A stretch of 55,959 nucleotides of DNA, filler included, from Platydemus manokwari (taxonomy: Eukaryota): assembly GCA_037951405.1 (NCBI GenBank). It is 5 parts of 5 records of this genome, joined end to end, with 100 filler letters (N's around TTAATTAATTAA, not from the genome) between each part and the next. Parts side by side here need not be neighbours in the genome. Positions count along the whole stretch, not along the records: positions 1 to 12,884 come from JBBMOY011925828.1; 4 more parts are not named here. The stretch is one strand, 5' to 3'. The position numbers and the translations under genes are program-made. This document shows positions 1-13,168 of this stretch, piece by piece. Each line of letters opens with the position of its first letter. Within the stretch, counting starts at the first letter, position 1. Under the pieces are notes generated by a model, which was given only the letters and a program-made list of their open reading frames with translations, searched no databases and was not told the DNA's origin.

Positions 1-563
1 GGTGCAAATCTAGATGTGTCCATTGACGAAATGGCAGCTCGAGCAGAGGTGAGCATTTGAGTCAGGTCCGCTGCGTTAGTTTCATTCAGTTTAATTGCAT
101 CAATTAAAATTGGGTTCATCGAGGGTCCTGAGTTTTTTACGGTCTGTGTGGCAAGTTTTCTAAATAAAATGGTATCCGAGATTACTTTATTGATGTCGTT
201 GCGCAGTTGTGGGAGAACTGGTGTGTGGTAAATTGCTGAATTGTTGATATGGTCGAGGATATGCTGAATAATGAAGAGGCCACAGTCGTGTGAGTTGAGT
301 TGAAGTGGCAGGTCTGGTAAGAAAGATTGGTTGAGGATAAGTCCATCTTTTAGAGCGCATAAGTTCTGGAAAAGGTTATCCAGTTTGTTCCAAAGGCATC
401 TTTGTTCTGCTGATAGAGATTTAGTTGCTGGGTCAATGTAGTATGATGACATTTTGAGGCGGTCTGCGATGTAGAGATTCCAGTGATTGTTGTTCCAGTG
501 GATTAGCCAGTAAGCATTTAGCCAAGTTGCAAGTTTCCTGAAGGGGAATGAAGGATGGACGCG
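1..563 (-). CDS. Ulp1/SENP-family (peptidase C48) cysteine protease domain; partial ORF running off the window edge, probably part of the mobile element
   Basis: Not in the ORF track. Manual minus-strand translation is open from at least ~563 to 1: RVHPSFPFRKLATWLNAYWLIHWNNNHWNLYIADRLKMSSYYIDP...LPLQLNSHDCGLFIIQHI...FA. It has catalytic His (HW, 483-485), Asp (YIDP, 432-434), oxyanion Gln and Cys in QxNxxDCG (Cys 282-284), matching the C48 pattern. Confidence 0.85.
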
Positions 564-1959
564 GATGCAACAGTTAGAACATGAATACTTGGAGGAAGTG
601 AACCGACAAGCTCACATAAAGCATCTACGTGAACGCTGTTTAGTCTACCAAGAGGCTTTCCAAAAAGGGAAACCATACCAATCTTCACTGGATCATTCAT
701 ACGCTCAGGCTAGTGGCACCAGCTCAAGCAGCTCCACTAATTATCCGAAACTGATTTATAAGTTAGAAGAAGCACGGACTCTTCTGACAGCTAAAATGAA
801 TAATTATATGCAACTCACTCCGTCGAGAGAGCAAACAGACACCTCCAATGGGTTACAAACCCCTTGTCTATCACCGATAGTCATGCGCGTAGAGAAAGCA
901 TACACATGCAACGAATACGAAGAAGAAGGTGACACTACCAAGGTAGTAGACACGTGGGAAATCGAAGAAATTCCCAAGGAAAAGACAAATGAAGCTTAAC
1001 AAAGTCTTACTCAAGTAATCACTCCCGAAAATGTGTTCGCGACAATCGAATTAACAACTGGGGAACAAGCAACGTTGACTCAGTTCTCTCGTAACTTAGT
1101 AAGGGAAGCTCAAAGGAACCCCCTAGACTAACAAATGATCAAGAGTATCTTAAATAATCACATTTACACTGCTATACCTACAGATGTATTGGCTGCCGCT
1201 GCACCAATACTGGTTGAACTCTTGGACAAAGGAGCCATTTACCGAAAAGAAGTACAGTTACTCCTACAACGAAATGGGCTAGCCATTCGGAGTCAACCGC
1301 AAGGAGCACCGATGCTCACGCTGCACATTAGAACCAGTCATCACGGGAACTGGCTCAAGATATACTCTTGCTTCTCACACGTTTGCAAATTAAGACAGGA
1401 TATCCGGCAGGAGAAATCAATCACGGAACCATTCATCATCACAAATCAATCAAATCCGGTAGATGATGACGAATATTTAGTTGACGTAGGCTGCTTACCA
1501 GACTTCGTCACAGTAGTAAAGGTACTAATAACGCCAGTAGAATCTAAACAATGGAGGAGAATACCCACATAGTCCAAGGCAGAAATCGAGCCAGCAACGG
1601 GAAGAGTAGAAACACAGTTATCAGTAGTTTTGGATGAGGACATCCAAGAAACCTCTCAATTCATGGAATACCAGGCAGGGTATGACCCACAACCATCTCC
1701 ACCGCCACCAGAGCCCGTTGTAGATGAGATCATAGAAATTGTGGACCTCGATTCACCAGCTATTGCAAGCAATCAGAACCATGAGGAATTCATACGGGAG
1801 ATAGAAAACCCTCCTCCAGAACCAGAGCCACCGATTGTGCCAACACAGGACATTAGTGAACCACCGCGGAAACGAAGAAACAGAGACACACAAGCCCACA
1901 CCAACAGTCAAGTACAAGCACAGTTGCTACGAGGACTGGCGGACGACACAACTATAAAT

Positions 1960-2445
1960 TCCAAGCAAGACATTCAACAATGTCTCTTGCGAATAGCAAA
2001 AGGGATTGATCCCTACAATCAACGCATAACAGAAGTAACCACCGAGGGTTACGAAAAACTACTCAGCAACATAAGCAGATACATGCCTAGGATTTGACAG
2101 ATCACACATGATCATCCCACCGTTGATTCAGAAAACGTGCTATGGGAAATTATTAAAGGTGGAATAACTGCATCAAGAGCCAAAATCATACTGATCAATT
2201 TGGCAAATAAAATCATGATGGCGTCATACGGGGACACATCACACTACCAAGAAACATTGCAACAGACGATCAAATTAGCACATCGAACCATAGGAAAATG
2301 GATTCAAACGCAAGGAGGATGGACCCAGTTTGGATACAGCGAGTCACTCACCACAGAAGGACTAGGTAACCTCAACAATAATGGGTTAATAAACACATTG
2401 GTAAAAGTTATTCTTATATGCAGCTTGATAGGAAAAACATCTATG
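1960..2445 (+). pseudogene. Bcl-2-like domain within the element polyprotein (one internal stop at 2095-2097)
   Basis: BH3-like IQQCLLRIAKGID (~1972-2010), BH1-like EIIKGGITASRAKIIL (~2146-2193; NWGR replaced by TASR) and a strong BH2 IGKWIQTQGGWTQF (W at 2299). These are followed by hydrophobic LINTLVKVILICSLIG. Confidence 0.75.
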
Positions 2446-4203
2446 CTCACCGCATATGATTGTTCGAATCCCAAGCTGTCCACAATGTATTCGTTAGTTG
2501 ATCTGTTCGAATGTCCAGCAGTCAATGTCAACAGCGTCAGACAAGGGCCACGGGATTCCTATTACTTGTATCAGGAATTAGAGTTCTATCGAACTACAAT
2601 CAAGGAATGTAGGGTCACGAAGGCTACATTCGAATACTATTGAGGAGTCTTTAGCCGCTCATCTGTACTAGATGCCAAACTCATTGCTCGCAGCATCACA
2701 ATCGCACCTAAAGCTTGCCAAGATGCTTTCGTACAAAGAAAACTCAGAGTCGACAGCGAAGACACTCTCACAGCAGAAGTAGGCGAGAGACTTGTTGAAA
2801 CAATCACACGCGGAGGCAAAATCGGAACAGACTGGACATGTATTGGACGAAGCAATGGAGATATTGTCTCTCATGTGGTAGAAATCGAAGACTACACCGT
2901 CGAATTAGTACAATATGAAGGGACATTCGACATGAAAACCGAAAACATGACTCAGTAGCCACATTGTGTATCCAAGTTTAATAGCTGCAATGTAGACACA
3001 GCCACATTAGTATACGAAGCCCGAAGAGCTTACTGTGACGTGGCACTACTCAAACAAGCATCGTTCATCGCAATCAACGGAAGCGCATGGGACCATCATA
3101 TTCCAGGCTGACACAAGGCCGACTAGATGGACGAATCGAAGAAGAGACATTGATCAAAAAGAGTGCTTCAATGGTACTAATATCCGACCAACAAACCGAC
3201 GCTATACGACGGATACGCGGACAGTCACTGGACAAATGTGGGACGCTAATGTACGAAACAAACTATCAAGGGATCTATGTGAGCCACCAGAGTGCTCGAG
3301 ATGCCAAAATTCTGAATGTCAAGGACGTCAAACTCACTACATACACCAACAATAAGGCCGATTACATATACCACGATCTGCTGCTACAATTAGCTACAAT
3401 TAGCAGAAACCCAGCATCATCAATGTAAAAGGGATCAAGAGATCGCACGAAACCGCATGGGCATAGTTATCACAAATCAGGACCTCGAAACACCCATTCT
3501 GATGGAAAATGGGGTGTACAGTCGAATCAGTGGTGAAGCATGGCACACTTACGAGTGTGAGCCAATTCAAGTCGCCATCGCAGACACTAAGAACTGCACA
3601 AGGGAGTTAGCAGTAATCTACAAGGAACAAACCAGGTACATTCAACCCATCACTCACATATTGCTTCCACCACAAAAGACAGAATGTAATCCACTGATTT
3701 CACCATTGTACAAGATTAATGAACAATGGGTGACTATACCGGATCGAAGACCACCTCGAAGTCCAGTACAACTGCTTAGGTTGGGAAACTCATTGACTAC
3801 TCGCGAATTCCAGTCCATATTTTCCACTGGAAAAAGGGGAGTCTACACCTCTAAGGACATTGCCGAAGCACGCAGAGCATTAGGATTTTACGAGCTCCGA
3901 GTCAGGGGAATAACAGAAATCATCAGGACAGTTTATCAGGATAGTGCAACCAGTCCGAACTATGATCACTTGTTCACAGTGGAACATCTCAAGAAAGCTG
4001 CTCACCATGTCACCTATCAAATATGGGGAGCCTTCGCAGCTTTTGGAACATTCATTACAAGATGCGTCGGCATTTATGTCATCTCCATAGGACTAAAAGT
4101 CATCATACAACGATTAGTATTCATGTATGACTTGTACAAACTGTTTGGCTGCTAATCAAAAATCATTTGCGGTATGTGCCCGATAATTGCCAACCGCCTC
4201 TTT
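2446..4203 (+). pseudogene. Chuvirus/Monjiviricetes-like fusion glycoprotein (env-like), disrupted by 3 stops and 2 frameshifts
   Basis: Ordered motifs typical of chuvirus-type glycoproteins: LTAYDC..SLVDLFEC; CRVTKATFEYY*GVFS (stop where the Cys of the CG motif is expected); CGTLMYETNYQGIYV; LTTYTNNKADYIY; QC...GVYSRISGEAWHTYECEPIQV; CTRELAV; PITHIL; CNPLISPLY; GVYT. The C-terminal hydrophobic block is IWGAFAAFGTFITRCVGIYVISIGLKVII...LFGC*SKIICGMC. Confidence 0.75.
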
Positions 4204-4679
4204 CATAAACATCATCACGGAAGAATGTACAAAATAGAAGAGATGATGAGAGAAATGAGACACGAAGTTCACTCTGCTCGACACGCCTCTTTTCGATCTG
4301 CCGTTTACGAGGAACAAGAAAAATACTACCCCTCCGACGAGGACAATGACAACGATAACGGCTATAGACCAAGTGGAACTGAGTCAATCATGATCGAGAA
4401 ACAGCCAACTCAACCCACGCTGCGGATGCAACAAACGATGAGAAACTACGAACAGGAACCATGCCTATCAACAGGCCAGAAACTATAACCGATATACCAG
4501 GAGAACAGTCACAGATACAGCCTCCTTCATACAGACAGTATTATACTCAGGTACAGTACCCAACTCAGGAATTACAAGTTATGGCCCAAACTGAACAAAT
4601 TACTGCGGAAGTAATGGTCAGAATGAACAGACAGAATCAACTGGGTTACAATGAATACTGCAACATAACCAACGAGTCA

Positions 4680-5180
4680 ACATGCACCGTCAAACTGACC
4701 CCGATCAGGATTAATAGACATCATGTCTTTGCATTAATTGATACGGGTGCTGATACTACAGTTATCTACCCTTGCATATTAAACGTACCAGAACTCATGA
4801 GTATCGGAAATACTAACGGAGTATCTATCATCGGAATCGATGGAAATGAACTACCACTCTTGGGATTACTCAGTTGCAAGATCCACCTCTGTGATCAGAC
4901 CATACCTATCGTAACAAGGGTTTCAAAGCTAAGCCCGTACGATTGCGTAATTGGAAAAGACACAATCCGACAGCTAAAGGACATCATGTACGAATGCGCT
5001 ACCGGTTCATTCATCAAAATGGTCAGAGACAGAAAAGCTCATCGAAACAATGTATATGCGGAACAGGAAATCATCATACCCCCTCGCTCAGAAACAATGT
5101 GTTATGTACAAACGAACCGGGCAGACGACGAAGAAGTTCTATTCGAACCCAGCAGTGCAATGATAGACCGCACGAATATA
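4680..5180 (+). pseudogene. Retropepsin (retroviral-type aspartic protease) plus post-protease linker, truncated before RT
   Basis: FALIDTGADTTVI (Asp codon 4740-4742), flap IIGIDG and CVIGKD. It is followed by VYAEQEIIIPPRSETMCYV, the kind of linker seen between PR and RT in metazoan Gypsy elements. Confidence 0.85.
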
Positions 5181-5700
5181 TGAATTTTTTATTTAAGTAC
5201 TTAAAAAGAATTCTAGTGGTTTGAAATTAAATATTAAATACACTTGAACTTCAAAGTCTCCTAAAATTTAACTATTTGAAAAACGGATCAAACTAGGTTG
5301 AATTGCAATTCTTTTGAAAATTTTCGAGGATCTCTTTCTCAACATTAGAAGAAAATTGAAAGATACTCTAAATTTTTACAATTATTTTATAAAAATAAGC
5401 AATGATATTATTAAATATGTTTGTAGTTAAGTAACTCAATTTATTGTTATAAAAAATTAAATTTAAAAACTTAAATAATCATATTGAGTGTTGTGCGTAG
5501 AATAGAAACGTGGTTTAAAAATTGTTTTATTCCTATTGGACATTCTAAAAAGTGAGATATTAACTGATAAATACTAATAAATTAAACGTCATAGTTATAT
5601 ATAAAATTAAGTTACAAAATTATCTAATGCGCGGAAATTTATTATTACAGAAGTAGGTCATTTCTTAACTTAAGCCAAAAATATTCTATATTGAACTAAA
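5179..5700 (+). repeat. Dispersed AT-rich repeat family A (copy 1; begins mid-element)
   Basis: TGAATTTTTTATTTAAGTACTTAA...TTTGAAATTAAATATTAAATACAC and the later ATGCGCGGAAATTT block recur at ~53560-54055 (+). Parts recur at ~36620-36870 (+) and ~46308-46640 (-). Confidence 0.75.
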
Positions 5701-6010
5701 AAAATAAAACTGATTGCAGTTGTTTAGTTGTTAAGTTGATTAATTATAGAACGTCAATATTAGAGTTTTGTTAGATTTATTGTAAGATTTCCATCAAATG
5801 ACGTAAATTCATTTTGATGTAAACCAAGCTATCAAAAATGGGACATTTTAAATTAATTTTGAATATATGTAGTTAATGATATTTGTGAAAAGATTATATT
5901 TTATTGCCAAATATGCTCTAGATGACATAAAAATAAAATTCAATTAGTTATAAATTAATCACTTTGTCAATTGTTTAAACATATTTTAGGATAATTTTTT
6001 AAAAATCCCC

Positions 6011-9000
6011 ATGGATATATCAAAGAGAAATTACTCAAACTTAGAGGATAAATTTTCCATGTAAACAAATATTAATTTTCATTAAAATTTAAGGAATAAA
6101 ATTTTTAGAAAGATCCCAGAAAAGCAAAATAGTAATCTCACAACTGCAACAATGCTTTTAGAAAAGCGTCGTGAGATGATTGAAATTGAAAATGCATTCA
6201 ATTCTCAAAAAGATGTAAGATGAAATTAGATATTAGCAAATTGTTATAAATGATTTAATTCATTTACATTGTTGGGAAATTTATTTTATTAATTTTAAGT
6301 TTTTTCTATCTGAAACTTGCCCATAAACAAATTACATAATATTTTCTAAGTGAATTTCAATATTGTTTAATTTGTATTAAATTAATTAATATAATTTGTA
6401 TTTCAAGTTATGTGGCTTTTCAAAACCATTCTTATTTCAATTTCATAGCGATTTTTTCGATGATATTTTGACAAAGTATTTGTCATTTTGAAATATTTGT
6501 TAAAATTGAATATATAACTATCAGAGAAATATACTATTTATAATAATAAGTCGCTAATTAACAACATTTATTTAATCAATTTGAATTATCTATTCAAAAT
6601 TTTGTAGAGTTTTTACAAAATAATAAACAGAAAAATGAAATTTCAACAAATTATATGAAATGAATTTTTATTTTTATCTATGTTATTGGAATATTTTTAT
6701 TCATAAATGAAATTCTCGAATCGAAATTGTAGGAATTTAAAATGAAAATGGAAAGTTTTCGACAAAGAAAACACGAATTGGACAGAAAAGAATTGGAATT
6801 ATCATCATCCTTATTGAAATTTAATAAATTTCTCAAAGAAAACGAATCGAAACGAAACAGAGCTCTCCATAAAACGTCAATCGAACTGGAAAATCAAAAG
6901 AACAAAGACAAGGAAATAATGGAGTTGGTTTGGTATTTGGTGTTTTAATATATCTTTAATATTCACTCCACAACAAAAAACAACAGTTTCAAACAAACAT
7001 TGGTTCTTTATCGAAATAAACAAGAAAAATTGAAATCGAAATTGGAACGATATCGATTGTATTTGACATTTTTCGAGAGTGTTATAGAGATAACAGAGGA
7101 ATTCACAGAAATCAAAGAAATCGTTGATCGTTATTCGACGCTTGCTAGTGCTCATGATGTAAGTTCAATGAAGGTGATTGGATCAATGTTTTGATGTCGA
7201 TGATTTCAGGATTTATTGGAGCGAAATAAAAATAATCAAATAGCTGTCAATGAGGAGAAACAAAATATGATGCAATTAAAAGAAGTTTTAATTTTTGCAT
7301 TTGTTTTAATTGATTGATTTTTATAATTTAATTTTAAATTTAAAATTTCATTCCGTGATAGAAGGGGGAGATAATATCATTTTAAAATCATTTTTCTATA
7401 CCAGTTCAAGACATGAATGATGTTAATATATAATGCCAAAAAATTTGACTTACAACTCATCGATCAATCTTTTGAGTTGTTTTAATTTTATCAAGAACCT
7501 CATAACATTCAATATTGATATTTTGTTGATCTAGTTTGATTTGATTAGATTTGATATTATTTTCAAAATTATTATTGCTAGACGCTTTTATTTTATAAAA
7601 CGCGCATTGAAAATGAATTGAAAAATCACGACACCAGATTATATTTTCATTACAATGATTTAAACAAATTAATATTTTATATTTTTTCAAATTTCAATTC
7701 ATTATAAATCCTCACATCTTCCATTTCTTTAAAATCTTTGATTTTCTCTGAATTCTTAATTATATCTGTGTCGAATTTTCTAGATAAATTTATCTATGTA
7801 AACATTTTTTTCGCATCTACTTTCTATTTTCTTTATATCACTTCTACATATTCTCTTTATCTTTTATACAACTATGCTGTATCCTTCTTACATCTTTTCT
7901 ATAGGTTCCTCCTCCTCTCCTATACTTCCATGCCACAGATAATCTCAGAATCGAATTCAAATGCGTGGTCGCCATGTAAGCCCCTACTATTTAATAAAGA
8001 ATGCATTGAAACCTAAGTGAAAAGTCAAGCCACAAAAATATATTTTTATTTCAATTATTAAAACAAATAAATATTTCATAAAAATCTGATTTTAAATTTT
8101 TTCAAATTTCAATTTATTATAAATCCTCACAATTATCATTAATATTGCAGCTATGTAGGAGCGTGTTTGGAATTATATTCTGGATTTTATTAATTTGTCT
8201 TTCCTATAATTTTGATTATTAATATTAAAATTACAATTTCAAGTTAGTCTTCATAACTATCTATTTAAACAAACGATTTAATACACAACGCTCATTCGTT
8301 GAATGGATGGCTCCATTTGACGAACCGATATTAATCCCTGAATTGAAAATCTTTCTTCAATACGTTCTGATCGTCCTTCCATTAATAAGAACCATGAGTA
8401 GAATGGACTACAAGACGATCTCTCCTTGGACAGTTTGTTGAAATTGTCAATGGTTTGATTTGAAAAATATTGAGTAAATGAAATCTGTCAATTGATCATG
8501 AGTCCATCATGAGGATGATTATATCAAAGATAAGTGAGATTTCGAATTGGTGAAGATAAAATATTTTATAATTAAATTTTATAAAACATTTTTCAAAGAT
8601 TAAAAAAAACTTGGAATAAAATTTGTTATCTCATAAAAAAACTGAACAATAAATTATATTTAATTAATTGGATAAAACTAAAATTAGATCAACATCTCTA
8701 TTCCAGCTGAGGTCGCGAAATAATAAACAAATAATCAATCATTAAATAAAATCAAAATATTCTCGCTCAATTTTGTTTGTACTTCAATGTTTTCATTTTT
8801 CTTTTGACTGTAGAATAGCAATGGGCAGATTATTCGATGTAATAATCGGCAAGGAATTTTACAATTAGAATATGACCGTCTTCAATCGATAAGTTTGGAA
8901 AAATCAGCAGAATGGAATTCCTTAATCAGTGAAGTGGCCCAAAAAACTTTGGAATATGGGAAAATAAAAATGTTAGATAATTTGATTTTTATGTCCAATA

Positions 9001-10675
9001 ATTATGTATTCAATACATTATTTATCAAATTTATTCAATATTTTCCATATTATTTGAGATTAGAATATTGTTTCATGTCAATTATGTTAATATAATTAAG
9101 ATGAGTCGAATATTGGAACAACTAGTATTGAGATAATAATTGTTGACTCAATTATTTATAAATTTAAAATTATGTCATAATTTCTGACATTTATTTATTT
9201 TATTATTCTTGAACAATTGATCAGTATTGTTGATGGTGTGAGATTATTTAAAAATACGATAAATCATTAAAATTTACATAAGATTAAAATTAAAAAATTA
9301 AAAGATATTTTAAAAAAATATATTAAAAATAATTATACTATATTGATATTTATAAAATGATCTTGTTTAAAAAATTACTATTAACCTCAATAAAAAAAAA
9401 TTAAAATTACTAAAAGTAATTTTAAATAAAAAAATAAAGATATAATATTAAAATATGTGTGCATTTTTAGATTTAAAAAGAGAAGATAAATCAGATGGAA
9501 ATAAATTTTAATATTTTAAAATTTGTTTAAAATGGATGTATTATAAATATATATTTTTTGTTCTGTTGAAAACATGTCTTTTGATTTGAATATTAAAACG
9601 AAGAAGTTTTAGCAACTAACAATATTTATAAGAGTCTTGCTAAGCAATACTGTTAAATTTTAAAATTTGATTGAAATGTGATGTGATAAATATTTGTGCT
9701 GTTAAACAAACATGACTTCTGATTTAAATCACTTGAATGAAGAAATGTTGTCAACTAACAGGTGGTATGAAATGAATGTGTTTGTTATAATTTTGTTTTA
9801 TTGGAACTCTCATTTCTTGTTCATTTTTAACACATCTGTATCAAATGTGAGTTAAATAAAGTTAAAAGAAAAGTTAAAAATGAAAACGTTATACAATCTT
9901 TTGTTTTAATATAACATTACAATTAAGGTTCAATCTTCAGTTTCAATCATTTGTTTTTTCCTCTTTAAGATTCCACAGTTTTTATGATTAATTTTTCTAA
10001 TAATTCAAAAAATAAAAACTCCTTAAACTTAATTTAACATTTTGCTGATAATGAAAACGATGGTTATATTCAGCATGATGAACATCGGCTAAACAGATAT
10101 ATAATCTCGCCATATCTTTAAATGTATTTCTATGAAATTATGAATATATTTAGAGGAATACAGCCATTATAATCAGTATTTATTTTCATAAAGTTTCATT
10201 CAACCTGATAACAAAACATAGAAAAAATAATTAGAAATTCACTTATCAAAATATTTCCATACATTCTTAATAACAAGTTTTGAGTGTTTCCTTTCACAAA
10301 CTCTTACTTGGCGCATAAACATATCCTCTCATTTTCCAACGTGTTTTATTAAAATTACACCCAATTTACCATTATTACTTAGTTTTCTCTACCTTTTATA
10401 AGGTTTTTAATTCATTTTTTTGAAATTTTTACGTCTAAAGCTCATGTTTATTTTCAGGGCAACAAGTAATCTTTATTTTATATCTCAGAAGTTCTTGGGC
10501 AATAAGATCAATTCATTAAATATTGTCGATACATTGAAACAATTGGATAAAGTTTGATTATTCAGCTGAAAATTTTATTTATTGTTGATATTTTTATTAG
10601 ATCAATATTTTTATTGAAGATCTCCAGTATATTTTGAAAGAAGTCAATAACGATGACGAATTAAGCGAAATATAA
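6011..10675 (+). CDS. CFAP73: Cilia/flagella-associated coiled-coil protein CFAP73/CCDC42 (DUF4200 family), 8 coding exons
   Basis: GT-AG exons 6011-6060, 6109-6214, 6733-6923, 6987-7158, 7210-7284, 8814-8971, 10458-10551 and 10601-10675 splice into one frame. The product is MDISKRN...TATMLLEKRREM...LLKFNKFLKENESKRNRA...EFTEIKEIVDRYSTL...KTLEYGKIKMATSNLY...DTLKQLDKINIFIEDL...*. An AATAAA lies at ~10723. Confidence 0.88.
7690..8131 (+). repeat. Dispersed repeat family B (~440 bp, bounded by ~27-bp direct repeats), in CFAP73 intron 5
   Basis: AATTTCAATT(C/T)ATTATAAATCCTCACA at both ends, with a pyrimidine-rich body and core AATCGAATYCAAATGCGTGGTCGCCATGTAAGCC. Other copies are at ~49340-49766 (+), ~44760-44916 (+, partial) and ~21190-21960 (-, several partial). 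The ORF 7738-8016 is a by-product. Confidence 0.75.
9265..9770 (+). repeat. Dispersed repeat family C, in CFAP73 intron 6
   Basis: GATTAAAATT...TTTATAAAATGATCTTG...GAAGA(T/C)AAATCAGATGGAAATAAATTT...CATG(T/A)CTTTTGATTT...CAACTAACA recurs at ~51215-51545. Confidence 0.7.
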
Positions 10676-12758
10676 ATCGTTACTTTACTGCTGTGAAGTT
10701 TTCTTCCAGAATTGTTGTTTTGAATAAATGGGAGATTTATGATTTGTTGAGATTGTTTAAATTAATTACAATTTTATAATTTGTAGTCGATCTTTTTTGC
10801 GTTTCTCAATTAAAACTGATATAAGATTCACAACTAGTTTATATTCATTCATTTAATGCTGGGTAATTTATACGTTTATGAAACGAATGATTAGTTTACT
10901 GAGATCTAGTGAAATGTTCTTTGATTATTTATAAATCCATTTTCTTAATTGTGCGCGCATAAATTTGATACTGAAATATCATAACCATATATATTCTTAG
11001 TTTTGATTGGTTATTATGGTTTACAATTTTTGGATTGAATCTCAGAAACTAATAAAAGATTAAGAATCTAAAATTTCTGATCGACTTATACCAATATTAA
11101 TAGTTTTTCGATTACTTTTACCACTAACTTAAACCAAAATAAACTTAAAAGTTTCCTGGCTAACTGGTTTATTGCTCCTAAAGGTACTGATTTTGAGTAT
11201 CATCTGTCTTCTGCTATTATTGGTTTTGAGTTCGAGGATATTGTCTTGTGTTCGTTATTTCGTTCTCCGTTTCTTCTAAAATGTTCATTCCGTTATGAAA
11301 CCTTTGCTTTTCAAAAATTCCGCCCACAAAAATTATTTTTTGCAATTTGAAAATGAGCTGGCTTTCATATCCAATTTATATTCCAAACTGCAGATACTTG
11401 TTGAGATATTTCTCTATTTTCGTAATTTCTTCATTAATTTCGTCAATAAATAGACCAATCTCTTTTATTTTTAAGCACATAAACAATGAAAAAAGTTCAC
11501 CGTTTGATCTTAAAATGCCTTGGGAAAAATATAATTTCTCTATATTTAAAATAATAAAAAGATATCCTTATATAAATAGCCTAGTCTAAGTATTTTCGTC
11601 ACTTAAATTCTCTCTTGTTTTAAAGCCTCATATGAATTTTTATAATATAGATGTACCCATTTTTTGTTGATATTTCAAAGTTCAGATTCACAATTTATTT
11701 GGTTTTTAAAACCCTGATCTTTAAATGAGCTCTATTTTATTGGAACCACATTTTAATTTTTGAAATATCGATTTTGAAGCTCTCTCTCTTAAAATATTTT
11801 ATATATCCCGACAGATTAATGGACTACAAATCACGATCATCAAATTGTTGGTTTTGAGCTTGTAATGTTTTTTATCTTAATTCTTATCAGACTCAATAAT
11901 ATTCCTATTGTGGATCACAGCTGCCTTGATCAGTCTCTACAAGTCCTAATCAAGCCCAAGGTACAAACTATAAAACCTTAATCTTTCTATTTTCAACTCC
12001 CAATCAATACAATGTGGAGATAGTACGATTGGTAACAATGATCAAAGCTTAATAAACTTAGTCAGTCTCAAATCATCAAAATCTATATAATTTATCAATC
12101 AACAACTAATAAACAAACTATTAACTATGGTAAGATTTATTATGTTCTAAAACACTGATGCACAAATTATACAATAAGCAAGTAATTAATTTTAATACTA
12201 CAAATACTACAAATACTTTTAAACGCAAAACGGCTACCTTACAAATTCTGAAATAAAGCTACGATTGAGAAACTTCAACTAAAGAAGCTGAACTGATAAT
12301 CTCAAAAGGAGTTTTGAGATACAACTCAATAATAAAATGATATATGATACTTTACATGATAGAGATAGTGGTTTTACATTATAAATCGAACTCACTTTGA
12401 ATTCGAATAAATCGGAAAATATAATGGCTGCTGTAATCGCTAACTAGACTAAGGAATCGAAGGCTTAATGACAAATACGATCCAAGATTCTGCAATTGAC
12501 TAGCTTCTGGTTATTTCGTATGACGGCTTACACAATCTAGTGGTTTCTCAATGTATGAACGAGAGCGAAGTTATGATTTTTTCAACTCTTATATATACCT
12601 CTTTTAGGTGGCGCTTATAATAGTCCCGATTATAATATATTTCGTTACATTTTTATAAATATCCCATATTTTTAATGAATATTGCTACAATAATATTGTC
12701 GGGATAATACCCATGCAGGCTGCAAGCCTATAAACTACATAACAATCCCATAAACTAC

Positions 12759-12801
<43 letters not shown>

Positions 12802-13168
12802 AAACCAAAAACCCACATTAATTAAAATGTAGGCGTGTGGGCGGAATGATATTAATAATAGATATAAAATTTTTTCGACAAATTNNNNNNNNNNNNNNNN
12901 NNNNNNNNNNNNNNNNNNNNNNNNNNNNTTAATTAATTAANNNNNNNNNNNNNNNNNNNNNNNNNNNNNNNNNNNNNNNNNNNNTATTTATTACTTTAGT
13001 TTTTTATTATTAGAAATTTTTAAGTGAAATCTTTTAAAATTAAATAAATCAGAGAATAAAATTTATTTTAAAAATCACATTAAAAATAATTTTAACGAAT
13101 ATAATTTCAGATAAATATTAAAATTTTCTATTTATTGCTTGCTTTCATTAGTGACATTATTAAGTTTA

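What the first reader, a model, noticed from the sequence alone, without database searches (positions are those of the whole stretch)
1960..2340. Mobile-element-encoded Bcl-2 homologue with an altered BH1
Seen: a clear BH2 (WIQTQGGW), a BH1-like GGITASR in place of the usual G-x-NWGR, and a BH3-like LLRIAKGID lacking the canonical Gly-Asp. Established: vBcl-2 proteins are typical of large DNA viruses (herpes-, adeno-, pox- and asfarviruses). Inference: the element may block apoptosis in cells where it replicates, for example stem cells. The retained BH1 Arg suggests it can still bind BH3 ligands.
Basis: partly seen in the sequence, partly recalled or inferred. Interest (0 to 1): 0.8.

Follow-up and report, generated by a model that had tools for sequence, protein, structure and literature searches.

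The report
Bcl-2-like module in broken retroelement
The Bcl-2-like stretch is real: it is a divergent Bcl-2-type domain just ahead of a captured viral fusion glycoprotein in the polyprotein of a gypsy-type retroelement, but this layout is already published for planarian Burro elements and this copy is a broken, truncated relic.

Summary
The three quoted motifs are in the sequence, in one frame interrupted by one in-frame stop. The region belongs to a 43% GC retroelement fragment (about 540-5180) set in about 25% GC flank.

**Layout:** unknown upstream part, then the Bcl-2-like module, a hydrophobic segment, a Monjiviricetes-type fusion glycoprotein (Pfam 135 bits) and a retroviral aspartyl protease. 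The fragment is then cut off.

**Bcl-2 homology is supported.**
- The window alone scores below threshold (Pfam E=0.078).
- A profile of natural relatives hits only Bcl-2 family chains in the PDB (Bcl-xL, E=9.6e-5).
- Seven of 11 family members give weak Pfam Bcl-2 hits at the same position.
- A low-confidence AlphaFold model of an intact relative returns only Bcl-2 family folds (TM 0.41-0.56).

**Motifs:**
- The BH2-like motif is conserved among relatives.
- BH1 keeps only the basic residue (R/K in 9 of 9).
- The BH3-like stretch could not be confirmed.

**Novelty:** the same order (Ubi/SUMO-like, BCL2-like, in-frame env, PR) is published for planarian Burro/GYPSM1 elements (PMC6431247, citing Grohme 2018), so the kind is known.

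**State of this copy:** it has eight in-frame stops and three frame changes, and it lacks LTRs, gag, RT and IN. It is not functional. An anti-apoptotic role remains an inference.

The parts
1..540 (-). Neighbour: 5'-truncated Ulp1-like (Peptidase_C48) open frame. It runs off the left edge and abuts the element fragment head-to-head.
   Evidence: Pfam PF02902, E=4e-6, 27.3 bits (cut-off 20.7), profile positions 87-182 of 217 only. Strand composition flips at about 500.
540..5180 (+). Fragment of an env-bearing Ty3/gypsy-type LTR retroelement polyprotein gene (43% GC, A-rich sense strand). It has no LTR, no gag zinc knuckle and no RT/RNase H/IN in the window. Broken by 8 in-frame stops and 3 frame changes in all.
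   Evidence: Composition. One frame stays largely open. tblastn of intact relatives covers 1060-5168 in two + frames. No repeat pair that could be LTRs. Long relatives run gag(CCHC) - ... - env - PR(x1-4) - RT - RNase H - IN.
1141..1524 (+). Upstream polyprotein segment shared with relatives; candidate ubiquitin-like domain (weak).
   Evidence: Local phmmer against P0007 residues 420-549, E about 1e-7 in a 35-sequence set. AlphaFold pLDDT 52 with a beta-beta-alpha core. Foldseek hits are non-significant (E>=0.46), though many are ISG15, UBX, SUMO or UBL folds. Relative P0003 has a weak Pfam ubiquitin hit at the equivalent place (E=0.031).
1900..2345 (+). Bcl-2-like module (one part; broken by one in-frame stop, no frameshift). 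The start is approximate, set from the helix span of the model of relative P0012. Contains BH3-like 1984-2010 (unconfirmed), BH1-like 2158-2178 and BH2-like 2299-2322.
2386..2433 (+). Hydrophobic segment at the junction. It is the signal peptide of the glycoprotein (the Pfam env model starts here) and a possible membrane anchor for the Bcl-2-like module.
   Evidence: The Pfam env model maps its first positions here in the window and in relatives. A hydrophobic 15-mer (mean Kyte-Doolittle 1.5-2.8) lies 22-57 residues after the BH2-like W and 7-17 residues before the conserved [YF]DC in all 9 sequences.
2383..4362 (+). env: Monjiviricetes-type (chuvirus/mononegavirus-like) fusion glycoprotein, in frame with the module upstream. 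One part; broken by 3 in-frame stops and 2 frameshifts. The 3' bound is extrapolated to the end of the Pfam model.
   Evidence: PF24664: best intact piece E=2.7e-39, 135 bits (cut-off 27). Other pieces match earlier profile positions in collinear order. Break counts.
4701..4979 (+). Retroviral-type aspartyl protease domain, reached after one more change of frame. The domain is itself open. The element ends about 200 bases later, before any RT.
   Evidence: Pfam RVP E=1e-4, 23 bits (cut-off 20.7), and related aspartyl protease families. Matches the PR domains of P0028, P0022, P0007 and P0002.
5181..12884 (.). AT-rich flank (about 16-29% GC), host-like. The exon-like ORF at 6742-6945 (+) belongs to a DUF4200 coiled-coil gene.
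   Evidence: Composition. PF13863 E=3.4e-13, 50 bits (cut-off 29.7). No tRNA or Rfam match.

Best explanation
**Shown.** Window 1900-2345 is the remnant of a divergent Bcl-2-fold domain inside the single long polyprotein of an env-bearing Ty3/gypsy-type LTR retroelement. The order of parts is: upstream part (possibly ubiquitin-like), Bcl-2-like module, hydrophobic signal segment, mononegavirus-type fusion glycoprotein, aspartyl protease. This is the order published for planarian Burro/GYPSM1 elements, so I take the element to be Burro-like.

**Inferred mechanism in intact relatives.**
1. The polyprotein starts translation in the cytosol.
2. The hydrophobic segment after the module then acts as an internal signal sequence for the glycoprotein ectodomain.
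3. This would leave the Bcl-2-like domain on the cytosolic face of the ER membrane, held by that segment at its C-terminal side. That is the topology of tail-anchored cellular Bcl-2 proteins.
4. There it would bind BH3-type ligands through a groove that keeps the BH1 basic residue and the BH2 tryptophans. This would delay death of the cell that expresses the element.

**This copy.** It is a relic: the module has one in-frame stop, env has three stops and two frameshifts, and gag, LTRs, RT and IN are absent. It makes no functional protein.
For: Homology:
- Profile of relatives against PDB sequences: the 60 best hits listed are all Bcl-2 family. Best is Bcl-xL at E=9.6e-5 over 74 residues spanning BH1 to BH2; A1/Bfl-1 scores 0.003 and Bcl-2 0.005.
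- Pfam Bcl-2 hits at the same place, immediately before env, in the window (E=0.078) and in P0021 (7.7e-5), P0008 (9.6e-4), P0019 (2.1e-3), P0012 (0.012), P0003 (0.055, profile positions 6-100 of 100) and P0002 (0.2).

Fold:
- The AlphaFold model of intact relative P0012 has seven helices in residues 9-146, with pLDDT 70-80 over residues 71-140.
- The 50 best Foldseek matches in the PDB are all Bcl-2 family (Bcl-xL, Bax, Bcl-2, schistosome Bcl-2), aligned over 135-166 columns with TM 0.36-0.56.

Conservation: see the column shares.

Element type and order:
- env and PR hits in the window.
- Long relatives carry gag CCHC, env, PR, RT, RNase H and IN in one ORF.
- PMC6431247 describes BCL2-like, then in-frame env, then PR in Burro, with Ubi2/SUMO-like before BCL-2.

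Topology idea: the Pfam env model begins at the hydrophobic segment, and that segment is present in all nine sequences.

Decay: counts.
Against: - No member reaches Pfam's gathering score (best 23.6 bits against 31.4).
- phmmer of either window piece against the PDB finds nothing relevant.
- The structural model is low-confidence overall (mean pLDDT 52, pTM 0.43). Foldseek E-values are only 0.013-0.16 with high rmsd.
- The sequence signal leans heavily on BH2. Two relatives, one lacking BH2 (P0034) and one with Q-G-W (P0032), give no Pfam Bcl-2 hit.
- The N-terminal half of the window's module, including the BH3-like stretch, matches nothing.
- The canonical BH1 W and G are absent in all members.
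- The hydrophobic segment has a signal-peptide-like core of about 15 residues, shorter than typical tail anchors (from my own knowledge).
- Pro-survival against pro-death activity cannot be told from sequence.
- The link to Burro rests on architecture and one review. No planarian or Repbase sequence could be compared, and the closest database relative is only 42% identical.
Confidence: 0.75

Rival explanations
1. The domain has the Bcl-2 fold but does not block apoptosis. It could be Bax/Bok-like and pro-death. It could act on autophagy or ER calcium. Or it could serve the element itself, for example as a cytosolic module that helps glycoprotein insertion, trafficking or particle assembly at membranes.
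For: - Bax is among the fold matches (rank 28).
- The canonical BH1 signature is lost in all members and no BH3 could be verified.
- The module is always fused directly to the env signal segment.
- Several related elements do without it, so it is dispensable for the basic cycle.
Against: - The best sequence and fold matches are pro-survival members (Bcl-xL, A1, Bcl-2).
- The basic residue at the BH1 Arg position and the BH2 tryptophans are retained in all members. From general knowledge these line the ligand groove.
- Burro also carries a BIR (IAP-type) domain according to PMC6431247, which points to cell-death control.
Confidence: 0.17
2. Chance resemblance: a helical linker of the polyprotein happens to carry a W-x3-GGW string and is not homologous to Bcl-2.
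For: - Every single-sequence score is below the Pfam threshold.
- Direct PDB searches with the window pieces are empty.
- The model is low-confidence.
- The signal depends strongly on BH2.
Against: - The profile search returns only Bcl-2 family chains among 177,635 PDB sequences at E down to 9.6e-5, aligned from BH1 to BH2 with correct spacing.
- Seven divergent members (24-43% identical) hit the same Pfam family at the same position.
- The fold search over the whole 135-166-column domain returns only Bcl-2 family.
- Independent authors noted the BCL2-like motif in Burro.
Confidence: 0.05
3. The module came in with the glycoprotein gene from the donor negative-strand RNA virus, as an N-terminal extension of its G protein. 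It was not captured separately from a host.
For: It is contiguous and in frame with env in every member that has it.
Against: - The Pfam glycoprotein model, built from viral G proteins, starts at the hydrophobic segment and not before it.
- Many related elements have the same env without the module.
- The nearest structural neighbours are cellular, not viral.
Confidence: 0.03

Closest known systems
BCL2-like motif of planarian Burro / GYPSM1 giant gypsy-like LTR retrotransposons (Jurka 2007; Grohme et al. 2018; Arkhipova and Yushenova 2019, PMC6431247)
   Same: - Same domain order: (Ubi2/SUMO-like) - BCL2-like - env in frame between gag and pol - PR.
- env resembles mononegavirus fusion glycoproteins.
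- AT-rich host genome.
- Decayed copies with stops and frameshifts are described for Dugesia japonica.
   Different: - I could not compare sequences, because no planarian genome or Repbase entry is reachable with these tools.
- The window holds only about 4.6 kb of what would be a 25-30 kb element.
- MATH/TRAF, BIR, ankyrin and dUTPase domains were not seen in the window or in the metagenomic relatives scanned.
Cellular pro-survival Bcl-2 proteins (Bcl-xL, Bcl-2, A1/Bfl-1)
   Same: - Best sequence-profile and fold matches.
- BH2 W-x3-GGW-type motif.
- Basic residue at the BH1 Arg position.
- BH1-BH2 spacing.
- A hydrophobic segment after BH2.
   Different: - It is not a free-standing protein but a module of a retroelement polyprotein.
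- The canonical BH1 W and G are missing.
- BH3 and BH4 are not detectable.
- The hydrophobic segment is homologous to a viral glycoprotein signal peptide.
- It scores below the Pfam gathering threshold.
Viral Bcl-2 homologues of large DNA viruses (gammaherpesviruses, African swine fever virus, iridoviruses), plus the Bcl2 of a lancelet adintovirus
   Same: A Bcl-2-fold gene carried by a virus or virus-like element. Weak fold matches to these (E 0.06-0.5).
   Different: - The carrier here is a reverse-transcribing LTR element, not a DNA virus.
- The domain is fused into a polyprotein.
- The fold matches are weaker than those to cellular Bcl-xL.
Anakin and other LTR retrotransposons that captured a chuvirus-type glycoprotein (PMC7642597, PMC10084718)
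   Same: Capture of a Jingchuvirales/Monjiviricetes-type fusion glycoprotein by an LTR retroelement.
   Different: Anakin is a BEL/Pao-family element of mosquitoes (PMC7642597). I did not check whether it carries a Bcl-2-like module, and the search hits show none. In gypsy-like elements other than Burro, env is a separate ORF (PMC6431247). Here env lies in frame between gag and pol.

Membership tests
Bcl-2 family (Pfam PF00452; Bcl-2 fold) | Score at or above Pfam's gathering threshold (31.4 bits) | tested here: not met
   Window 14.0 bits. Best relative, P0021, 23.6 bits. 7 of 11 members hit at E<=1.
Bcl-2 family (Pfam PF00452; Bcl-2 fold) | Significant profile similarity to solved Bcl-2 family proteins | tested here: met
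   Family profile against the PDB: Bcl-xL E=9.6e-5. The 60 best hits are all Bcl-2 family, aligned from BH1 to BH2.
Bcl-2 family (Pfam PF00452; Bcl-2 fold) | BH2 motif (two tryptophans flanking a Gly-Gly) | tested here: met
   Window 2299-2322. Column shares: W 9/10, G 8/10, G 10/10, W 10/10.
Bcl-2 family (Pfam PF00452; Bcl-2 fold) | Canonical BH1 signature (Asn-Trp-Gly-Arg type) | tested here: not met
   Only the basic residue is kept (R/K 9/9). W 0/9 and G 0/9 at the preceding two columns.
Bcl-2 family (Pfam PF00452; Bcl-2 fold) | BH3 helix with its conserved Leu and Gly-Asp | tested here: inconclusive
Its piece matches neither the relatives nor any Bcl-2 profile. A helix occupies the equivalent place in the model of P0012.
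Bcl-2 family (Pfam PF00452; Bcl-2 fold) | Globular bundle of seven or eight helices around a central hydrophobic hairpin | tested here: inconclusive
   Model of intact relative P0012: 7 helices, mean pLDDT 52 (70-80 over BH1-BH2). The Foldseek top 50 are all Bcl-2 family, TM 0.36-0.56, E 0.013-0.16. The window's own broken frame was not folded.
Bcl-2 family (Pfam PF00452; Bcl-2 fold) | C-terminal membrane anchor | tested here: inconclusive
   A hydrophobic segment follows BH2 in all members, but it is the signal peptide of the next domain.
Bcl-2 family (Pfam PF00452; Bcl-2 fold) | Binds BH3 ligands and regulates cell death | not testable with these tools
   No functional data. This copy is broken.
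Burro-like giant Ty3/gypsy LTR retroelements of planarians | env in frame between gag and pol, followed by PR | tested here: met
   Window: env, then PR. Relatives P0002, P0007, P0022, P0028 and P0030 carry them in one ORF. Described for Burro in PMC6431247.
Burro-like giant Ty3/gypsy LTR retroelements of planarians | BCL2-like motif immediately upstream of env | tested here: met
   literature.
Burro-like giant Ty3/gypsy LTR retroelements of planarians | Ubi2/SUMO-like domain before the BCL2-like motif | tested here: inconclusive
   Only weak hints. The profile search against the PDB was empty.
Burro-like giant Ty3/gypsy LTR retroelements of planarians | LTRs, gag with CCHC knuckles, RT, RNase H and IN | tested here: not met
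   Absent from the window because the fragment is cut at both ends. Present in long relatives.
Burro-like giant Ty3/gypsy LTR retroelements of planarians | Sequence relationship to Burro-1 to -4 / GYPSM1, and a dugesiid host | not testable with these tools
   No planarian genome or Repbase library is available. The window's ORFs are not in the protein collection.
Monjiviricetes-type viral fusion glycoprotein (PF24664) | Score above the gathering threshold, with collinear coverage of the model | tested here: met
   135 bits against 27. The pieces cover profile positions 87-193, 245-329 and 332-583 in order.

The most novel reading that the evidence does not exclude
The glycoprotein's signal peptide doubles as the membrane anchor of the Bcl-2-like module. 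Co-translational insertion and signal-peptidase cleavage would then release an ER-anchored, cytosol-facing Bcl-2 mimic from a Gag-Env-Pol polyprotein. In addition, the module would be an ancestral feature, since lost repeatedly, of a widespread clade of env-bearing gypsy-type elements reaching beyond planarians. The diverse metagenomic relatives and the non-monophyly of module-bearing elements in a rough env tree hint at this.
Probability: 0.3. Interest if true: 0.5.

Novelty: already known. Interest (0 to 1): 0.25.

Why it matters
A retroelement that carries its own cell-death regulator next to a captured viral fusogen shows how far LTR elements can go in assembling virus-like gene sets. It is also relevant to animals whose biology depends on long-lived stem cells and controlled cell turnover. 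That point was already made for Burro elements in 2018-2019.

This analysis adds four modest things:
- Residue-level evidence that BH2 and the BH1 basic residue are the conserved core of the module.
- Evidence that related modules exist in diverse, unnamed metagenomic relatives.
- The observation that the module always sits directly on the env signal segment, which suggests a specific membrane topology.
- The finding that this particular copy is dead.

Tried and rejected
**Searches that found nothing**
- Direct phmmer of both window pieces against PDB sequences found nothing relevant.
- Word-based protein searches with either piece found nothing. The length window of that tool excludes long polyproteins.
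- The exact look-up of the window's ORFs found them absent from the collection, so the source genome could not be named.
- tRNA and Rfam scans of the window were empty.

**Hypotheses rejected**
- Stop-codon reassignment as the reason for the many in-frame stops. The six stops in the first long stretch are 2 TAA, 2 TAG and 2 TGA.
- An LTR pair in the window: none found.

**Tests that were inconclusive or invalid**
- Ubiquitin-like domain upstream: the profile search against the PDB was empty and the model and fold search were non-significant.
- Testing the upstream piece against a family profile: the first profile contained that piece, so the result was circular and I discarded it. The profile without it gave a score of -1.9.
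- The NJ tree of one env piece has no support values. I use it only as a hint.

- The broken frame was not read through.
- dN/dS across copies was not possible, because no close copies are available (best identity 42%).

1. My script printed the bounds of open reading segments, which implicitly shows where stops lie. I did not repeat this afterwards.
4. I first read the BH1 correspondence off the consensus line that HMMER printed. I then replaced that with a mapping by profile position and chain coordinates.

Full report
**1. What is in the window**

The piece (1-12884) has three compositional parts.
- Bases 1 to about 540 are G+T-rich on the + strand. On the minus strand they carry an open frame that runs off the left edge. 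It matches the C-terminal two thirds of the Ulp1 protease domain (Pfam Peptidase_C48, E=4e-6, 27.3 bits).
- Bases about 540-5180 are 40-46% GC and A-rich. One + strand frame is much poorer in stops than the other two.
- From about 5181 to the end the sequence is 16-29% GC. It holds an exon-like ORF of a DUF4200 coiled-coil gene (6742-6945, E=3.4e-13). There are no tRNA or Rfam matches.
- No repeat pair in the window could be LTRs.

**2. The observation**

- LLRIAKGID at 1984-2010
- GGITASR at 2158-2178
- WIQTQGGW at 2299-2322

That frame has one in-frame stop within the module.

**3. Surroundings**

Directly after the BH2-like motif comes a short linker, then a hydrophobic segment (2386-2433). 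After that comes a glycoprotein gene that matches Pfam PF24664, 'Monjiviricetes_fusion' viral fusion glycoprotein.
- The largest intact piece scores 135 bits (E=2.7e-39, cut-off 27).
- The other pieces match earlier profile positions in collinear order.
- The model's first positions fall on the hydrophobic segment.

A retroviral-type aspartyl protease domain follows (4701-4979; RVP E=1e-4, above its cut-off). The element then stops abruptly at about 5180, before any reverse transcriptase.

Break counts (with frames):

| Part | In-frame stops | Frame changes |
|---|---|---|
| Upstream part | 3 | 0 |
| Bcl-2-like module | 1 | 0 |
| env | 3 | 2 frameshifts |
| Between the env tail and PR | 0 | 1 |

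The stops are of all three kinds, so this is decay and not a variant genetic code.

**4. Relatives**

The word-based search found nothing in its length range. I therefore used the exhaustive HMMER search with the piece downstream of the stop.
- It gave 30 hits with E<=1e-3. Most align only to the start of the glycoprotein.
- P0002 (1582 aa, E=2e-16) and P0012 (248 aa) align from the BH1-like region onward. Others reach into the BH2 region.
- Eight relatives carry W-[IVM]-x3-[GQ]-G-W in the equivalent place. A second search added P0032 and P0034.
- Other relatives (P0007, P0018, P0022, P0024-P0030) have the same glycoprotein preceded only by a basic, low-complexity linker.
- The long relatives show the full architecture in one ORF: gag zinc knuckle, a variable middle, [Bcl-2-like module in a subset], glycoprotein, one to four aspartyl protease domains, RT, RNase H and integrase. 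This is a Ty3/gypsy-type element with env in frame between gag and pol.
- tblastn of these proteins covers window 1060-5168.
- All come from unnamed ENA, JGI or Logan assemblies. The closest is 42% identical.

**5. Is it a Bcl-2 domain?**

*Sequence evidence*
- The window alone gives Pfam Bcl-2 E=0.078 (14 bits, cut-off 31.4).
- The same family is hit, always just before env, in P0021 (7.7e-5), P0008 (9.6e-4), P0019 (2.1e-3), P0012 (0.012), P0003 (0.055, covering profile positions 6-100 of 100) and P0002 (0.2). That is 7 of 11 members, and none is above threshold.
- A profile built from the alignment of relatives was searched against all PDB sequences. It returned 177 sequences at E<=10, and the 60 listed are all Bcl-2 family. 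Bcl-xL is best (E=9.6e-5, 74 residues from BH1 to BH2), then A1/Bfl-1 (0.003) and Bcl-2 (0.005).

*Structure evidence*
- I modelled the intact relative P0012 with the 11-row alignment. Mean pLDDT was 52, and 70-80 across BH1-BH2. There are seven helices within residues 9-146.
- Foldseek against the PDB gave only Bcl-2 family proteins in its top 50 (Bcl-xL, Bax, Bcl-2, schistosome Bcl-2). They align over 135-166 columns with target-normalised TM 0.36-0.56 and E 0.013-0.16.
- Against predicted viral structures the matches to viral Bcl-2 homologues were weaker (E 0.06-0.5). These included gammaherpesvirus, African swine fever virus, iridovirus and a lancelet adintovirus Bcl2.

Taken together I regard homology to the Bcl-2 fold as well supported. 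It is divergent and below curated thresholds.

**6. Which motifs hold**

I aligned the members to the same 568-position profile and used the chain coordinates.

| Column | Share among sequences covering it |
|---|---|
| BH2 first W | 9/10 (Y once) |
| BH2 first G | 8/10 (Q twice) |
| BH2 second G | 10/10 |
| BH2 last W | 10/10 |
| Column on the BH1 Arg of Bcl-xL | R or K in 9/9 (R in the window) |
| The two columns before it (W and G in Bcl-xL) | 0/9 each |
| The Gly four residues before the Arg | 3/8 |

The BH3-like stretch is not confirmed:
- The upstream piece has no Pfam, PDB or database relative.
- It does not match the relatives or a family profile built without it.

**7. Comparison with the literature**

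Arkhipova and Yushenova (2019, PMC6431247) describe the giant gypsy-like Burro/GYPSM1 elements of Schmidtea mediterranea and a Burro-like element of Dugesia tigrina.
- A BCL2-like motif was also noted by Grohme et al. 2018 in Burro-2, -3 and -4.
- They also note decaying Burro fragments with stops and frameshifts in Dugesia japonica.

The window shows exactly this order. I found only weak hints of the ubiquitin-like domain: homology of 1141-1524 to relatives, a low-confidence beta-grasp-like model with non-significant ubiquitin-like fold matches, and a weak Pfam ubiquitin hit in P0003.

I could not read Grohme et al. 2018. I also could not compare the window with any planarian sequence. The assignment 'Burro-like' therefore rests on architecture, composition and this review. 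The host is not identified.

**8. Mechanism**

*Shown*
- The module is a Bcl-2-type domain.
- It is translated as part of the polyprotein.
- It is always followed, after 22-57 residues, by the hydrophobic segment that begins the glycoprotein.

*Inferred*
- That segment acts as an internal signal sequence. The module would then stay on the cytosolic face of the ER membrane with a hydrophobic C-terminal end, as cellular tail-anchored Bcl-2 proteins do.
- The conserved BH1 basic residue and BH2 tryptophans suggest a ligand groove is kept.
- The best matches are pro-survival members. Burro also carries a BIR domain, according to the review.
- A death-delaying role for cells that express the element is therefore the most likely reading.

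Sequence cannot tell pro-survival from pro-death activity. The hydrophobic core of about 15 residues is more signal-peptide-like than anchor-like.

BURRO1 is intestinally enriched and de-repressed in differentiated cells on smedwi-2 knock-down. It appears in neoblasts only after triple PIWI knock-down.

**9. This copy**

With one stop in the module, five further breaks in env, three stops upstream, a further frame change, and no gag, LTR, RT or IN, this locus is a dead fragment. It abuts another truncated coding fragment (Ulp1-like) in the opposite orientation, next to a host gene.

**10. Verdict**

- The kind of thing is already known. A specialist in planarian genomics or retroelements would not be surprised, hence low interest.
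- What remains open and mildly novel is the topology idea, and the breadth and age of the module among env-bearing gypsy-type elements. A rough tree of one env piece does not group the module-bearing elements together.
Noticed in passing
window 1-540, minus strand: Open frame running off the left edge with a Ulp1/SUMO-protease domain (Peptidase_C48, E=4e-6, above cut-off). It lacks the first about 86 profile positions and abuts the retroelement fragment head-to-head. Its sense-strand composition resembles that of the element. I did not determine whether it is another mobile-element fragment or an accessory gene.
   Followed up: partly
window 6742-6945 (+), within the AT-rich flank 5181-12884: Exon-like ORF matching DUF4200 (PF13863, E=3.4e-13), a coiled-coil domain. 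Neighbouring small ORFs (7000-7191, 8895-9092) gave no family hit. This suggests the element fragment lies beside or within a host gene.
   Followed up: partly
relatives P0002, P0007, P0018, P0022 (proteins): Two to four tandem retroviral-type aspartyl protease domains follow env in one ORF. This is an unusual multiplication of PR.
   Followed up: no
relatives P0007, P0018, P0022, P0024-P0030: These have the same glycoprotein and element type but no Bcl-2-like module. A basic, low-complexity linker precedes the env signal segment. In a rough env tree the module-bearing elements are not one clade, which hints at repeated loss.
   Followed up: partly
window 7658-7725 and 8073-8140: A 68-nt direct repeat, 81% identical and 415 bases apart, in the AT-rich flank.
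   Followed up: no
window 1141-1524 (+): Segment homologous to P0007 residues 420-549. The low-confidence model has a beta-beta-alpha core, and many non-significant fold matches are ubiquitin-like (ISG15, UBX, SUMO1, UBL). It could be the Ubi2/SUMO-like domain reported before BCL-2 in Burro.
   Followed up: partly
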